A DNA stretch of 63,514 nucleotides, the filler included, from Octopus bimaculoides (Eukaryota), in the NCBI RefSeq assembly GCF_001194135.2. It is 6 parts of 5 records of this genome, joined end to end, with 100 filler letters (N's around TTAATTAATTAA, not from the genome) between each part and the next. Parts side by side here need not be neighbours in the genome. Positions count along the whole stretch, not along the records: positions 15,227 to 20,672 come from NC_069010.1; 5 more parts are not named here. The stretch is one strand, 5' to 3'. The notes below the pieces were generated by a model. The model searched no databases. It was given only the letters and a program-made list of their open reading frames with translations, and was not told the origin of the DNA. Of the stretch, positions 14,736 to 20,949 are shown piece after piece. The first letter of the stretch is position 1. The number at the start of each line of letters is the position of its first letter. The translations under genes were made by a program, and so were the position numbers.

Positions 14736-15455
14736 TATATTATTGAACTTATAAAGCAAAATACACCGAATATGCTCTTTTGTCACTTCCATTATAGCTT
14801 TGAAAACAATAACTGTTAAAACCGAACTGCACTCTCCAAAATTACATTGAGAATAAGTAAAAGGTAAAATTATTACCTGTTTTATAGCAAGTTGATACAG
14901 GTAGTTTATACCGTTCGGTCTCGACTAAGCAATTGAATTTATTCAGCATGAGGGTCGTGCGTCTTTCCAGTAGTGGTAGGATACTGTGCATCTCGTTGTG
15001 TTCGAAGGTTATAAAGGACCTCCCCTGTTCGAAGGTTATAAAGGACACAGGTTTCGTGTGTCACATAGCTAGCTAGAGGCGATGGCTTCTTGGAGCTAAT
15101 TCACGGCAGCTTTCGTCCTAATTTTGNNNNNNNNNNNNNNNNNNNNNNNNNNNNNNNNNNNNNNNNNNNNTTAATTAATTAANNNNNNNNNNNNNNNNNN
15201 NNNNNNNNNNNNNNNNNNNNNNNNNNGGATTGCCAACAACAATATATTTCATTCAATTTTAGAAAAATTGAAGTATACCTTTGAAGTATACCTGAGCATA
15301 TTGAACCGGTTGTGTGACTTTTGGCCCACCCTGTGTGCAATGTCAGTGTGCACACACGACAGAGTGTAAGCGCCTGTCTGTATTTGGTGGGGAGGAGGGG
15401 AAAACTTGTGGTAAGAGGCCAGAATGGTAGTTATATGGAGAAGGAGGTGTGTGTG

Positions 15456-15488
<33 letters not shown>

Positions 15489-15611
15489 TTGTGTTTGTGG
15501 GTATGATATGTGTATAATCAAGTGAAGTGTATATTGACCATTCTCTGGACTTTCTCTTTGTGTCTTTTGCAGGAAAAGAAATGCTGCCACAACAAGCCAA
15601 AGCTATTTCTC

Positions 15612-15643
<32 letters not shown>

Positions 15644-16651
15644 TGCATACACATACACGCACCAATCATCGTCATCATCATCATCATCATTTGGTGCTGC
15701 AAACATTCCGTCTTCCGAGATCTCCAGCAACCTTGGACCCCCCCCTCCCTGTGGCACCTGGGGGGGGCTGAGGCCATCCACCTCTTCCTTCCCTCCCACC
15801 GCACCAGCCCTTCTCTCCAACCCATTTTCTACTCTTGGTCTCACCCACTCTCCCCAGTTACGTCGCTCTCTTTCACCCTTTCTCTTCTCATACTTCATCT
15901 AACTCCCTCCCACTTATCTCTCTCTCTCTCTCCCCACACCTCTGTCTCTTCTCTCCCTCTCACATAATCTACCTTTCTGTCCCCTTCTCTCCATTTAACT
16001 TCTTCCTTCCTTCACATACTCTCTTTCTCTCTATATGCATATAACACACACACACACACACATGTATATATACCCAAACACTCAGACACACATAGGGGTG
16101 TCCGGGTGTTGTACTCATGATCACGAGTTCGGTTCCTGGATCAAGCAGTGTGTTGGTTGTGTTCTTGATCAAGACACTTCCTCTCACTTCGCTTGGCAAA
16201 TCACTTCAACACCTGACACACCTGTGAACCTGTTCAGACAACATCGATTTGCTGGAGGCAGGTGAGCTAATATATTTGATCGTCATAAACAAACAAATCA
16301 TTTATACAGGCCATTCTGCAAAAACTGAACACTCATACGTCATCCTCGACAGCAGAGTCCACCATGTGTGTGTGTGTGTATGTATGTACATATATATATA
16401 TATATATGAAAGCAAAGCATTTTATCTCGCGTTGCTTTGCATTCCCCTTAGATACCTGGCGCGGTGTTCAGGTAAAGTTGATTTGATAGAGTGAGCTAAT
16501 GTGTGACATGAACACTTGATCACTTATAAACAAATCATTTGTGCAGATCGTTTGGCAAAGACTGAACACTCATACATTGAGGAGAATATATATATGTCTC
16601 GGCAGTCATAATATCACCCGAACTGTTTTTCATTCACTGACCTTTCAACAG

Positions 16652-16701
16652 CCATCATCATCAACATATCAGATGCCAGAAAACATTACAAAAACACAAA
16701 G
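16652..16701 (+). other. Candidate 50-nt internal exon of unknown gene or 5' UTR exon
   Basis: Polypyrimidine acceptor ttttcattcactgacctttcaacag and donor aaag|gtaact; no recognisable homology. Confidence 0.3.
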
Positions 16702-16820
16702 GTAACTGCATTTGTCATCCGTTTTTGGATTTTATTTGTCATCTGATTTAGTTTTACAAATTATTTCTGCGTATTTTTAATTAAAAGTGGGTTTTTTTTT
16801 CAAGAATTATTATTTTTCTC

Positions 16821-16857
<37 letters not shown>

Positions 16858-16859
16858 GG

Positions 16860-17040
16860 TGGTGTGCTGGCAGAATCATTAGCATGCCAGGCAAAACTCT
16901 TAGTGATATTTTGTCCATCTTCATGTTCTGAGTTCAAATTGAGGTCAATGAAATAAGTACCAGTCATGCACTTGGGTCAATGTAATTGACTTGCTCTCTC
17001 GCCCCCCTCAAATTTCCGGCCTTGTGCCTATAGTAGAAGG
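16860..17040 (+). mobile_element. SINE family 1, CpG-decayed copy
   Basis: Same head, core and tail as 3520 with CpG to TpG/CpA changes (agcatgccaggcaaaa vs agcacgccgggcgaaa). Confidence 0.8.
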
Positions 17041-18211
17041 GGTTGTTATGAAGGAGGTGTGCTGGCAGAATCGTTAGCATGCCGAGTGAAAGTACTGACA
17101 TGCAACTGGTTGATTGTTTAACAAACTGATTAAACAATCTGTTTGTTGGTTGTTTAGATATCTAACCGATAGACTAGTAATAAAGAAGTGAAATAAAACG
17201 GCGGTGTGTTTACATTGACATAATGACCCACCCAAGACAAATATGATTTCACATCTAGAACCTTGTAAAACAAACACAAAACAAAATAGACATATTTTAT
17301 AAATGTTTTTATTCTTTATTTTTAAAAACGAAACATTGCAAGTTGTAAAATAATTAATAGTACAAATTAATTCATCATAAATGTTTTTCTTGCACAGAAA
17401 ATTCATATCTTTAATAATAGTGAATTAGTTGAAAAGATAGATACATAGATAATATATACATGACCGTTAAAAACTAAGCGAAATTACTGTGTAGTGACGC
17501 GTTTTGACTTTGTCACTACACAGTAATTCCCCTTCGTTTTTAGATAGATAGATATATATATATATACATATATAGATAAATATATACACATACATATATA
17601 TATATATATAACTACATATATATATACAAACAATAAATGAGTATATGCATATATACGTACATGTATGTACACACCTACATCNNNNNNNNNNNNNNNNNNN
17701 NNNNNNNNNNNNNNNNNNNNNNNNNNNNNNNNNNNNNNNNNNNNNNNNNNNNNNNNNNNNNNNNNNNNNNNNNNNNNNNNNATATGTATGTATGTATATG
17801 TGTATGTGTGTATGTGTGGACACAGCTGTATGTAAGCCGACTCAAGAAATCTCTACTGTGATTTTTGATTAATGTGCCCAGAGAGACCCTAGATGCCAAA
17901 ATATCGTTCACTTGATAACAATGGCACTCTTCTTTTTTTGCTATTATTATTATTACTATTATTAATAATAATAATAATAATGATAATAATAGTAATAATA
18001 ATAATATTAAGGCGGCAAGCTAGCAGAATCATTAGCACGCTGGGCAAAATGCTTAGCAGTATTTCATCCATCCTGACAAGATTGATGCATAGCTGATGAT
18101 TATTCATCCTGTCACGTGTATTTTGGATGCATTCATCGAAACATATGTAGGAGATACGAAGATATAAATGTTTTAATAATATTTTGAATGTTCGTCTTCT
18201 TTTTCTATTTT

Positions 18212-18253
<42 letters not shown>

Positions 18254-18322
18254 TACAGTATATACATACATGCACACATATGCTTAATGCTTGATCTTCT
18301 TTTTCAGAATCCCACCAACAAA

Positions 18323-18368
18323 ATGTATAAGTATCTACTATTTTTGGCCCTCGTCACCATCTTTGGAG
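18323..18368 (+). CDS. Candidate small secreted/GPI-anchored peptide, coding exon 1 (signal peptide MYKYLLFLALVTIFG)
   Basis: Acceptor tctttttcag|18308, start context caacaaaATG, hydrophobic signal-like ORF, donor ag|gtaata at 18369, phase 1. Confidence 0.65.
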
Positions 18369-18905
18369 GTAATATAGCCTTTCTTTCCCTTACATCCTGA
18401 TTGTGTGTGTGTGTGTGTGTGTTTAAGTGTGTGCACATGTGTATCTGTGTTTGTGTGTGTATGTATGTGTGTGTATGTGTGTTTATGTATGTGTGTATAT
18501 GTATGTGTGTTTATGTATGTGTGTATGTATATGTGTGAGTGTGTGTATGTATGTCTGTATGTGTGTGTGTGTACTTATGTGTGTGTATGTATGTGTGCGT
18601 ATGTGTGTATATGTATGTATGTATGAGTGTGCGTGTATGCATTGCATGCATGTGAGTGTATACACGTGTGTGATTGTATGTATGTGCATGTGTATGTGTG
18701 TGTACGTGTGTATGTGTATGTGTGTGTGTGTAAGTATACACGTGAGAGTATATACATGTACGATTGTGTGGATGTGCATGCGTATGTGTGTGCGCATATA
18801 CATGTATATGTGTGTGTATGTATCAATGTGTGTGTATGTGTGCAAGCAACTATATATTAATATTTATGTGTGTTTGTATGGTTGTGTGCTTGCACAAGGA
18901 AATAG

Positions 18906-18941
<36 letters not shown>

Positions 18942-19033
18942 ATTTTTGTTTTTATATATAACTTTATGTTTTTTTTATTTATATTCACACATTTCAATTC
19001 ATATTTATTAATTGGCGCCGTTATATTTTCCAG

Positions 19034-19060
19034 GACAAGCAGCAAAAGGAGAAAGTGCAA
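19034..19060 (+). CDS. Candidate small peptide, 27-nt exon 2 (GQAAKGESA)
   Basis: Strong acceptor atattttccag and donor gtaagt; phase 1-1 and in frame with exon 1. Confidence 0.62.
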
Positions 19061-19363
19061 GTAAGTGTGATTCCTTTTATGGTGGAAAAGGGTGGGTCTG
19101 TGTGAGTGTGAGTGTGAGTGTGAGTGATGACTGTAAATGAGATCCACCATCATACAAGCGGTGTATTTCGTTTCCAACCTTCCATGAAAACATAATGCCT
19201 GGCCATGGGAAAGTGTTACCATACTCGGAAACAGATCAGATGGAGGTTGGTGACAGGAAAGGCATCCAGCAGTGAATAATCTGCCTCAGCAAATTCTGTC
19301 CAGCACGGGAAAAGTGGATCCTAAAACAATGACGAGGAGGATGCTGATGATGACATATCACAG

Positions 19364-19455
19364 TATTGACCAGACCATCAGGTGGTGCTATACACCGCTG
19401 GTCACAATGCACTTCCAGTTCTGCCTTGATTGCACTATTATTTTTTTTATCTTAA
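19364..19455 (+). CDS. Candidate small peptide, terminal exon 3 (ILTRPSGGAIHRWSQCTSSSALIALLFFLS*), GPI-signal-like
   Basis: Weak acceptor atatcacag|19364 in phase 1 gives small residues, a polar spacer, a hydrophobic C-terminus and TAA at 19453-19455; AATAAA at about 19739 and 19768. Confidence 0.45.
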
Positions 19456-19701
19456 CAACTGAAATCGCCTGACTAAATTGTCTTCCCATCATTGAGGAGG
19501 CCTTCCCAAAATCCTCTCCAGATCTCTTGGATACCACTCGGCAACTGCAGATGACGATGATGATGATGATGACGATAATGTGTGCGCGTATATATATATA
19601 CATATATATATATACTGTCGTTTTTTTTCTGCTGTTTTGGTGATGATTTTTTGAGTTAGCTTACCAATTATTTTTGTTGGTAGTTAATTTATGATATATT
19701 G

Positions 19702-19732
<31 letters not shown>

Positions 19733-19779
19733 GTAAATGAATAAATTGTAAATGCAAAAATAAAACAAAAACACAAAGG

Positions 19780-20500
19780 ATTCTGCGGTACACATGTTTC
19801 AAGCTTTATATCAGTGTATAATTGACAACATAAAACTATCTTCAGCCGCAAATGTATTCTCTCCCAAGAATTATATCACATAGGCGTTAAAGGAGGAAGA
19901 AAGATGAGATATAAGAGGTGAGGTTCCGTTTGGTATTTTGCATTGTACTATACCTCGTAGAATTCTTACTTTGATATATTTATACATAATTTTCTCTGTA
20001 CTCCGGAATCCGTCCATACCTTGCCACAATTCAGTGTGTAGTGTTAAGTTGGTGGTTACAAACAATACAATAAAATAACATAACAAAAATGAAATAATAA
20101 TAATATAAAATAGGAATATAAAATACTAAGAAGAAAAAATAATACAGATATTCATACAAAAATAAAACTAAAATAAAGTAAAACATAAAAGGAGTCAAAT
20201 CGGTGGGGTGGGTAATCTAAGAAACAATAAGAGAAAATCTGGATAGTCGAGTAAGATACATCTAAGCTATTTAGACGGGTTGGCGAAGGGTGGTGAGGCA
20301 AAATCTAAATGTAGAAGAAGAAGATAAAAAGATAAATAGATATAGATAACAGAGATCTTAAAGGTCGTGAGGGATAGATATATATGAGCTGTGTCTGCCT
20401 ATATCAGTGGTGGGTCGTAAATAAGTAGTGTCAGGCCAGAATAAACTTGAAACATGATATTCTTGTGGTGAGTGGTCAACCTAAGCGAATTACAACTTAA
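19780..20500. promoter_or_regulatory. CpG-retaining unique segment, possible DNAJC13 promoter or non-coding first exon (donor ag|gtgagg at 19917/19918)
   Basis: CpGs are frequent here by eye, against CpG-poor flanks; DNAJC13 coding exon 1 needs an upstream exon. Separated from the gene by the 20717 spacer. Confidence 0.3.
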
Positions 20501-20949
20501 TTGTAGTAACTTATCTACATACACTTATCTAGATGAAGAAGGGTGAAGGAAGTGGAAAGGGTAATTATAACATAGAAGACCTTAAAGAATGAATAATTAA
20601 ACATGTCAACAAGAAAAGGGAAATAAAGTATATGGACGTTAAAATTCAAAATACAGAGTATTGGGGGCATTTNNNNNNNNNNNNNNNNNNNNNNNNNNNN
20701 NNNNNNNNNNNNNNNNTTAATTAATTAANNNNNNNNNNNNNNNNNNNNNNNNNNNNNNNNNNNNNNNNNNNNTGTGTTTTTAAACGGAGTGTATTTTTTC
20801 TGATGTTATATCTGTTCCTGAATGATGTGTAAAGAAATTTTGATTTAAGCATCTTAATGAATTCTTTATACTGAAATATATATTGAAGAAGATAAATATG
20901 TTCTTTTGAATTTATACGTTTTTGCGTCGTAACTCCTTTATTATTATTA

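What the first reader, a model, noticed from the sequence alone, without database searches (positions are those of the whole stretch)
18308..19790. Candidate unannotated 54-aa micro-gene: signal peptide, roughly 10-aa mature peptide and GPI-anchor signal (CD24/CD52-like architecture)
Seen: three phase-1-linked exons hidden in microsatellite and SINE DNA (18323-18368, 19034-19060, 19364-19455), and no ORF in the supplied track captures the spliced product. They splice to MYKYLLFLALVTIFGGQAAKGESAILTRPSGGAIHRWSQCTSSSALIALLFFLS*, with AATAAA at about 19739 and 19768. Established: GPI precursors have an N-terminal signal, a small-residue omega site, a polar spacer and a hydrophobic tail, and mammalian CD24 and CD52 are tiny GPI-linked peptides built this way. 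Inference: cleavage near G22 and attachment at S30 or G31 would leave about ESAILTRPS on the cell surface. Exons 1 and 2 have strong splice sites. The exon 3 acceptor is weak and sits just behind a (GAT)n-tailed SINE, so the C-terminus is the least certain part. No homology to CD24 or CD52 is claimed.
Basis: partly seen in the sequence, partly recalled or inferred. Interest (0 to 1): 0.72.

Follow-up and report, generated by a model that had tools for sequence, protein, structure and literature searches.

The report
Octopus secreted-protein exons; GPI tail unsupported
The first two proposed exons look genuine and already form a public Octopus bimaculoides gene prediction for a small secreted protein, but nothing supports the third exon that would make it a GPI-anchored mini-protein, so the finding is largely ordinary.

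Summary
The sequence facts are correct. The three segments, their GT/AG borders, the phase-1 linkage and the 54-aa product are all as stated.

The locus is not unannotated. The only database relative of the 54-mer is UniRef100_A0A0L8GTK4, a 62-aa Octopus bimaculoides protein. It maps 100% to window 18287-18368 + 19034-19140.

Exons 1 and 2 have a canonical signal-peptide shape and high-ranking splice sites.

Exon 3 has no support:
- Its acceptor scores below background: rank 90 of 249 in the piece and 26 of 96 downstream.
- Its peptide has no relatives.
- Hydrophobic C-termini are common in this T-rich DNA.

The public model's name, "Saposin A-type", could not be reproduced. The model has no homologues among 1.84 billion representatives.

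Verdict: this is the 5' end of an already-predicted orphan secreted-protein gene whose 3' end is unresolved. The CD24/CD52-like GPI reading is unlikely (about 5%). No transcript data could be consulted.

The parts
18287..18368 (+). First coding exon of the public O. bimaculoides gene model A0A0L8GTK4. The model starts at ATG 18287, which lies inside the pyrimidine tract of the acceptor-like site at 18308.
   Evidence: P0001 equals the translation of 18287-18368 + 19034-19140 exactly. ATG 18287 is the first start after an in-frame stop.
18323..18368 (+). It ends in a phase-1 donor, GAG|gtaata.
   Evidence: Donor rank is 31 of 451. It is the only ATG + signal-like + donor combination on either strand of the piece, against 0.017 per simulated strand.
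18369..19033 (+). Intron 1 (665 nt), mostly a degenerate TG/TGTA microsatellite.
   Evidence: TRF arrays at 18402-18732 and 18909-18939. It is spliced out in the public model.
19034..19060 (+). It has a strong acceptor (tttccag) and a consensus donor (gtaagt).
   Evidence: Acceptor rank is 6 of 249 and donor rank 7 of 451. The acceptor is used by the public model.
19061..19140 (+). Read-through continuation used by the public model instead of the 19060 donor: SKCDSFYGGKGWVCVSVSVSVSDDCK, then a stop at 19138-19140. It translates a (GTGTGA)4.5 microsatellite as VSVSVSVS. It could be coding or intronic; this is unresolved.
   Evidence: The microsatellite is at 19100-19126. There is no SapA similarity.
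19141..19356 (-). Presumed minus-strand repeat element with a (GAT)n/(ATC)n head at about 19329-19356, lying between exon 2 and the claimed exon 3. I recognised it as a repeat from memory only.
   Evidence: There is no second copy in the piece apart from the triplet tract. A protein search with an ORF spanning it found nothing. Its repeat status was not verified here.
19364..19455 (+). It is most likely not an exon. It would lie in the 3' UTR or in an intron of the real transcript.
   Evidence: The acceptor scores -6.1, rank 90 of 249 overall and 26 of 96 downstream. The peptide has no relatives. It lies in the same genomic frame as the exon 2 read-through but is separated from it by stops.
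19740..19764 (+). Two AATAAA hexamers (19740-19745 and 19759-19764). They could serve as poly(A) signals for any of the transcript models and do not discriminate between them.
   Evidence: 7 AATAAA in 2.4 kb of AT-rich DNA.

Best explanation
The piece is Octopus bimaculoides genomic DNA.

How it would work (inferred):
- Exon 1 encodes a cleavable N-terminal signal peptide and ends in phase 1. I recall this as the commonest arrangement for signal-peptide exons.
- The signal peptide sends the product into the secretory pathway.
- Exon 2 starts the mature chain (AKGESA...).

The 3' part of the gene is not resolved in this piece. Either exon 2 runs on to the stop at 19138-19140, as in the public model, or the consensus donor at 19060 splices to an exon beyond 20672.

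Such DNA readily translates into F/L/I-rich tails.

Shown: identity to the gene model, the ranks of the splice sites, and the absence of homologues. Inferred: that the model is transcribed, signal-peptide function, and non-use of exon 3.
For: - The only database hit to the 54-mer is P0001 (UniRef100_A0A0L8GTK4, O. bimaculoides), 100% identical over the 24 residues of exons 1 and 2.
- P0001 is exactly 18287-18368 + 19034-19140 of the window.
- Exon 1 and exon 2 splice sites rank in the top 1.5-7% of GT/AG sites in the piece.
- An exon 1-like combination is rare in simulated sequence, 0.017 per strand. The exon 1 plus exon 2 combination occurred in 0 of 600 simulated strands.
- The exon 3 acceptor scores below background, and better acceptors exist downstream.
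- Eleven of the 25 alternative downstream acceptors that give 15 aa or more also end in a hydrophobic tail.
- 12 of 126 open segments in the piece end in an uncharged hydrophobic decapeptide.
- The exon 3 peptide has no relatives.
Against: - The public model may itself be an ab initio prediction made from the same sequence signals. If so, it is not independent proof of transcription.
- P0001 has no homologue in 1.84 billion representative proteins, so there is no conservation evidence that exons 1 and 2 are coding.
- Given the real density of strong sites in the piece, exon 2 adds only modest statistical weight. I worked this out by hand from the site lists.
- By my own ad hoc rule, the exon 3 open segment is the only 1 of 126 that combines a hydrophobic tail with a small-residue triad (S-G-G) 5-14 residues upstream. 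The GPI-like look is therefore not trivial.
- No RNA-seq data, cephalopod genomes, SignalP or NetGPI could be consulted.
Confidence: 0.6

Rival explanations
1. No real gene. Exons 1 and 2 are chance ORF and splice-signal coincidences in repeat-rich intergenic or intronic DNA, and A0A0L8GTK4 is a spurious short ab initio model.
For: - P0001 is a 62-aa orphan with no relatives and no Pfam domain.
- It translates a microsatellite as VSVSVSVS.
- Its curated-looking name is not reproducible.
- Extrapolated to an octopus genome of roughly gigabase size (size from memory), 0.017 exon 1-like events per 5.3-kb strand would give thousands of chance occurrences.
Against:
- Exons 1 and 2 sit in unique-sequence islands between microsatellites.
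Confidence: 0.22
2. A three-exon gene encodes a 54-aa precursor that is cleaved after the signal peptide and GPI-anchored at S30 or G31, displaying a peptide of about 10 aa on the cell surface (CD24/CD52-like architecture).
For: - The ORF exists as described.
- S30-G31-G32 is a good omega/omega+1/omega+2 triad, followed by a 12-aa spacer and the tail ALIALLFFLS.
- It is the only open segment of 126 in the piece that meets my crude tail-plus-triad rule.
- A CTGAT branch-point-like motif lies about 15-19 nt upstream of the AG.
Against: - The acceptor has no pyrimidine tract and scores -6.1, rank 26 of 96 downstream.
- The uninterrupted hydrophobic run is only 9 residues. The tails I recall for CD52, CD24 and CD59 are 13-17 residues.
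- There are no relatives.
- The public model does not use this junction.
Confidence: 0.05
3. The locus is the 5' end of a prosaposin-like or other SapA-domain gene, as the UniProt name suggests. Exon 2 would extend to about 19101 (..GWVC|gtgagt) or further, and the rest of the domain would lie on exons beyond the piece.
For: - The source name is 'Saposin A-type domain-containing protein'.
- The layout superficially parallels human prosaposin as I recall it: a signal peptide, about 8 residues, K-C, then W-x-C, then D-C.
- GTGAGT donors follow the GWVC codons in phase 0.
Against: - Pfam SapA gives no hit to P0001 or its parts at E up to 10, while three genuine SapA controls score 56-70 bits against a cut-off of 22.
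- BLASTP against the human PSAP N-terminus finds no alignment.
- A three-sequence SapA HMM scores 1.2 bits, and 424 of 2000 shuffles do as well or better.
- The Cys spacing (C-x10-C-x11-C, with W-V-C) differs from SapA (C-x7-WC, then a 9-residue step to the next C, then 6 more).
- No remainder of a SapA domain appears in any + frame up to 20672.
Confidence: 0.05
4. Exon 1 is an internal exon entered through the strong acceptor-like site at 18308. Coding sequence would begin further upstream, and LLFLALVTIF would be a transmembrane segment of a larger protein rather than a signal peptide.
For: - Acceptor 18308 (cttgatcttctttttcag|AAT) ranks 3 of 249.
- The frame stays open from 18287 through the ATG at 18323.
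Against: - No upstream coding exon is evident.
- The T-rich tract may be coincidental, or may serve a 5'-UTR intron.
- The public model starts at 18287.
- There are no homologues to suggest a larger protein.
Confidence: 0.08

Closest known systems
UniProt/UniRef A0A0L8GTK4 (Octopus bimaculoides predicted protein, 62 aa, named 'Saposin A-type domain-containing protein')
   Same: It uses the same first-exon donor (18368) and second-exon acceptor (19034). It shares 24 identical residues, MYKYLLFLALVTIFGGQAAKGESA, and maps 100% to the window.
   Different: It starts 12 codons further upstream, at ATG 18287. It ignores the 19060 donor and ends at 19138-19140, and it has no hydrophobic C-terminus.
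Mammalian CD52 and CD24 (tiny GPI-anchored glycopeptides)
   Different: The hydrophobic tail is 9-10 residues, against the 13-17 I recall for CD24 and CD52. The exon that would encode the tail has no credible acceptor. The short mature peptide has no N-glycosylation sequon and few Ser/Thr, whereas CD24 and CD52 are, as I recall, heavily glycosylated carriers.
Prosaposin-type SapA domain (Pfam PF02199, PROSITE SAP_A)
   Same: It is the source's name for the public model. Cys and Trp residues follow the signal peptide soon afterwards.
   Different: No detectable similarity: no Pfam hit, no BLASTP alignment, and an HMM score no better than shuffles. The Cys spacing is wrong, and only three Cys are present.
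Phase-1 signal-peptide exons of secreted metazoan proteins (a general gene-structure pattern, from memory)
   Same: Exon 1 encodes essentially only the signal peptide and ends in phase 1. Exon 2 is a symmetrical 1-1 exon.
   Different: This is a pattern, not a family, and it says nothing about the mature product.

Membership tests
Public gene model A0A0L8GTK4 (O. bimaculoides) | Exact encoding of the model's protein at this locus | tested here: met
   The translation of 18287-18368 + 19034-19140 equals P0001. Exons 1 and 2 of the finding are contained in it.
GPI-anchored micro-protein (CD24/CD52-like architecture) | Cleavable N-terminal signal peptide | tested here: met
   Tested by rule only. 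K3 forms the n-region, and LLFLALVTIF is a 10-residue h-region with mean Kyte-Doolittle hydropathy of about 3.1 (hand calculation; it passed the 2.8 cut-off). The c-region is GGQAA, and the (-3,-1) rule allows cleavage after A18 or G21. No SignalP was available.
GPI-anchored micro-protein (CD24/CD52-like architecture) | C-terminal GPI signal: small omega and omega+2 residues, a polar spacer of about 5-10 residues, and a hydrophobic tail of about 12-20 residues | tested here: inconclusive
   The S30-G31-G32 triad is present and the spacer is 12 aa, but the hydrophobic tail is only 9-10 aa. No NetGPI, PredGPI or big-PI was available. The typical lengths are quoted from memory.
GPI-anchored micro-protein (CD24/CD52-like architecture) | The exon encoding the GPI signal is actually spliced to the signal-peptide exons | tested here: not met
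   The sequence signals do not favour it. Acceptor 19364 scores -6.1, rank 90 of 249 and 26 of 96 downstream. The public model does not use it. Transcript evidence could not be consulted.
GPI-anchored micro-protein (CD24/CD52-like architecture) | Experimental GPI linkage (PI-PLC release, ethanolamine labelling) | not testable with these tools
   This needs a wet-lab assay.
Saposin A-type (SapA) domain proteins | Match to the Pfam PF02199 profile above the 22-bit gathering score | tested here: not met
   No hit to P0001, its mature part or exons 1-2 extended, at E up to 10. Human PSAP N- and C-terminal SapA and the SFTPB SapA controls score 61.5, 69.7 and 55.9 bits.
Saposin A-type (SapA) domain proteins | Four conserved Cys, spaced as in the controls: C-x7-WC, a 9-residue step to the third Cys, 6 more to the fourth, then a V-W motif | tested here: not met
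   P0001 has C-x10-C-x11-C, W-V-C instead of W-C, no fourth Cys and no V-W. My own SapA HMM gives 1.2 bits, and 424 of 2000 shuffles score at least as well.
Saposin A-type (SapA) domain proteins | PROSITE SAP_A profile match, the presumed origin of the UniProt name | not testable with these tools
   No PROSITE profile scan was available. Only the name itself is on record.

The most novel reading that the evidence does not exclude
The 54-aa product is real: a lineage-specific octopus micro-gene whose last exon was recruited from unique DNA wedged between repeat elements. It would yield a peptide of about 10 residues on a GPI anchor, an invertebrate analogue of CD52 and CD24 that arose independently and that current annotation mis-terminates.
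Probability: 0.05. Interest if true: 0.55.

Novelty: already known. Interest (0 to 1): 0.12.

Why it matters
As it stands, it matters little. The credible part, a signal-peptide exon spliced to a short second exon, is already recorded as an O. bimaculoides gene prediction. The novel part, a GPI-anchored mini-peptide, rests on one weak AG site and on a hydrophobic tail of a kind that T-rich DNA produces readily.

Two things are useful:
- The public model A0A0L8GTK4 is probably mis-terminated or at least uncertain. It reads through a consensus gtaagt donor and translates a microsatellite. Its 'Saposin A-type' name could not be reproduced here and should not be propagated without checking it against the PROSITE SAP_A profile.
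- If transcripts exist, the locus may be an orphan secreted-peptide gene. Such lineage-specific genes are of interest in cephalopods.

If the GPI reading were confirmed by junction reads and PI-PLC release, it would be a neat case of convergent evolution of a minimal GPI-anchored peptide.

Tried and rejected
- Rfam scan of the piece: only sub-threshold miRNA-family hits on microsatellites. ARAGORN found no tRNA.
- Exact look-ups of P0001 and of two window ORFs in the contig collection, to obtain flanking octopus DNA: not on record.
- Representative-library search with P0001: the only other hit is an actinobacterial-looking repeat protein of 595 aa, P0002, which matches GGxGWxC. I judged this to be chance.
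- Protein search with a minus-strand ORF that spans the presumed SINE head and the start of exon 3, to delimit the repeat: no candidates. Self-BLAST of 19130-19600 against the piece found only the triplet and TA tracts. Whether exon 3 lies in a repeat family therefore stays open.
- Exact DNA scan of JGI metagenome contigs for exon 1: nothing.
- SapA hypothesis: rejected on Pfam, BLASTP and a small HMM.
- Search for further exons downstream of 19060 within the piece, requiring acceptor score at least -1, donor score at least 1.4 and an open frame: none. No SapA-like remainder in any + frame.
- Literature: no paper mentions A0A0L8GTK4. The 2015 octopus genome paper is not held. The 2022 paper only confirms that SINEs dominate octopus repeats (PMC9068888).
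- The third homologue search, structure prediction and fold search were left unused, because no remaining question justified them.
Full report
**Observation**

I read the piece 15227-20672 and rebuilt the proposed transcript. The three segments are:
- Exon 1, 18323-18368, 46 nt: ATG..TTGGAG|gtaata.
- Exon 2, 19034-19060, 27 nt: ttttccag|GAC..GCAA|gtaagt.
- Exon 3, 19364-19455, followed by a TAA stop: atatcacag|TAT.

AATAAA hexamers lie at 19740 and 19759. There are seven AATAAA in 18301-20672, so they carry no information.

- The DNA is AT-rich, 22-42% G+C around the finding.
- Intron 1 is filled with TG-type microsatellite.
- SINE-like heads are repeated three times upstream (families D12 and D13).
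- There is a 100-N assembly gap at 17682-17781.

Rfam and ARAGORN found nothing real.

**The locus is already annotated**

A search of 5.8 billion protein clusters with the 54-mer returned one protein, P0001. This is UniRef100_A0A0L8GTK4 from Octopus bimaculoides, 62 aa, named 'Saposin A-type domain-containing protein'. Its sequence is MLDLLFQNPTNK-MYKYLLFLALVTIFGG-QAAKGESA-SKCDSFYGGKGWVCVSVSVSVSDDCK.

It equals the translation of window 18287-18368 + 19034-19140 exactly. Three things follow:
- The window is O. bimaculoides.
- The model differs in starting at the upstream in-frame ATG 18287, and in reading through the 19060 donor to a stop at 19138-19140.

'Unannotated' is therefore wrong for two thirds of the proposed gene. 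The remaining third, exon 3, is exactly the part the public model lacks.

**How good exons 1 and 2 are**

I scored every GT and AG in the piece with a generic donor and acceptor weight matrix. The frequencies were written from memory, so only the ranks should be trusted.

| Site | Rank |
|---|---|
| Acceptor 19034 | 6 of 249 |
| Donor 19061 | 7 of 451 |
| Donor 18369 | 31 of 451 |
| Acceptor-like site 18308 (just 5' of the ATG) | 3 of 249 |

The exon 1 peptide has a textbook signal layout: K3, the hydrophobic run LLFLALVTIF, then GGQAA. The (-3,-1) rule allows cleavage after A18 or G21. No predictor was available to confirm this. ATG 18323 has an A at -3, whereas ATG 18287 has a T at -3 and lies in the pyrimidine tract.

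In a chance test, an ATG plus signal-like peptide plus a donor at least as strong as the observed one occurred:
- once on the + strand, which is exon 1 itself;
- never on the - strand;
- 0.017 times per simulated strand (600 first-order Markov strands).

Adding an exon 2-like exon gave 0 of 600. Two caveats apply. The thresholds were set after seeing the data. The real piece has more strong sites than the simulations, so exon 2 on its own adds only a modest factor. Overall, exons 1 and 2 are better than chance for the amount of sequence read, but they are not proven to be transcribed.

**How good exon 3 is**

Its acceptor has no pyrimidine tract, because the 20 nt upstream are GAT repeats. It scores -6.1, below background. 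It ranks 90 of 249 in the piece and 26 of 96 among AG sites downstream of exon 2. Sites at 19522, 19497 and 19382 score better.

From the phase-1 donor at 19060 there are 98 AG choices:
- 25 give 15 or more residues.
- 11 of those end in a hydrophobic tail, drawn from five distinct ORF ends (...FFILTTEIA, ...ALIALLFFLS, ...FFSAVLVMIF, ...TVVFFLLFW, ...IVLYLVEFLL).

Across all six frames, 12 of 126 open segments of 25 or more codons end in an uncharged hydrophobic decapeptide.

From residue frequencies I would expect roughly one to four such segments per piece. That puts the chance of one being available downstream of a given donor here at about 0.1-0.4. This is an inference, not a computed result.

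The uninterrupted hydrophobic run is 9 residues. That is short compared with the 13-17 residues I recall for CD52, CD24 and CD59. The exon 3 peptide shares no words with anything in the protein database. No credible internal exon follows exon 2 within the piece.

**The SapA name**

If the UniProt name were right, the locus would be the start of a prosaposin-like gene. I tested this four ways:
- Pfam finds nothing in P0001, its mature part, or exons 1-2 extended to GWVC, at E up to 10.
- In the same run, three genuine SapA domains score 61.5, 69.7 and 55.9 bits against a 22-bit cut-off.
- BLASTP of P0001 against the human prosaposin N-terminus gives no alignment.
- A small HMM built from the three controls scores P0001's mature part at 1.2 bits, and 424 of 2000 shuffles do as well or better.

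The Cys spacing also differs, and part of the supposed domain is a translated (GTGTGA)n microsatellite. No remainder of such a domain appears in any + frame up to 20672. I therefore treat the name as unreproducible. The PROSITE profile that presumably produced it could not be run.

**Relatives and context**

- A full HMMER scan of 1.84 billion representative proteins with P0001 found only itself and a 595-aa repeat protein, P0002, which looks actinobacterial. P0002 matches GGxGWxC at E 1e-5, which I judge to be chance.
- A protein search with an ORF spanning the presumed SINE and the start of exon 3 found nothing.
- Self-comparison shows no second copy of 19130-19600 in the piece.

Whether exon 3 lies in a repeat family, and whether 19141-19356 is the SINE I think I recognise, both remain untested. 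The literature has nothing on this accession. PMC9068888 confirms only that SINEs dominate octopus repeats.

**Conclusion**

The best reading (about 0.6) is that exons 1 and 2 are the signal-peptide-encoding 5' end of an already-predicted orphan secreted-protein gene, with an unresolved 3' end. Either the exon reads through to 19140, or the consensus donor at 19060 splices to an exon outside the piece. These two options cannot be separated here. A chance gtaagt-quality donor within the 107-nt exon has a probability of about 0.14. A chance 26-codon open read-through has about 0.16. Both are my estimates from the composition and site density.

The rivals are:
- no gene at all, with a spurious model (about 0.22);
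- exon 1 as an internal exon entered through 18308 (about 0.08);
- a SapA-type gene (about 0.05);

Spliced RNA-seq across the named junctions would settle all of these at once.

**Novelty and interest**

The credible part is already known as a database prediction, and the novel part is unsupported. Interest is low (0.12). The practical by-product is that A0A0L8GTK4 looks mis-terminated, and its name could not be reproduced with Pfam, BLASTP or a small HMM.

Noticed in passing
window 17467-17543 (+): A strong hairpin about 780 nt upstream of exon 1. An 18-bp stem (17482-17499 pairing with 17511-17528, 17 Watson-Crick pairs plus one G-U) sits inside imperfect arms of about 30 bp. RNA MFE is -32.7 kcal/mol, z-score -8.2, and 0 of 200 shuffles fold as well. 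There is no Rfam match. It could be a miRNA-like precursor or a small palindromic mobile element.
   Followed up: partly
window 16847-17030, 17042-17083, 18000-18072: Three copies or fragments of one SINE-like element head (GGTGTGCTGGCAGAATCATTAGCATGCC...), 69-88% alike, each preceded by a triplet microsatellite, (TTG)n or (TAA)n (families D12 and D13).
   Followed up: no
window 16291-16338 and 16528-16575: A local duplication, 83% identical (D14). The highest-scoring donor-like site of the whole piece (16262, gcag|gtgagc) lies just upstream of the first copy (16291-16338), and a similar gtgagctaat motif precedes the second copy near 16490, so it is probably repeat sequence and not an exon border.
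   Followed up: no
window 19100-19126 and protein P0001: The public model A0A0L8GTK4 translates a (GTGTGA)4.5 microsatellite as VSVSVSVS and reads through a consensus CAA|gtaagt donor. Its UniProt name, 'Saposin A-type domain-containing protein', is not reproducible with Pfam, BLASTP or a small SapA HMM.
   Followed up: yes
window 18290-18322: An acceptor-like site, cttgatcttctttttcag|AATCCC, ranks 3 of 249 and lies directly 5' of the exon 1 ATG, with the frame open back to 18287. Exon 1 may have an upstream 5'-UTR or coding exon. A TATAAATA motif at 18246-18253 lies at the end of a (TA)n tract, so it is uninformative.
   Followed up: partly
window 15668-16030: An (ATC)n tract is followed by a CT-rich block of about 340 nt that is strongly C-skewed, with GC skew of -0.45 to -0.5. 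It is probably another repeat element. It shares only the triplet tract with 19545-19600.
   Followed up: no
window 17682-17781: A run of 100 N (an assembly gap) flanked by TA/TG microsatellites, inside the piece and about 540 nt upstream of exon 1. Any upstream exon or promoter element could be hidden there.
   Followed up: no
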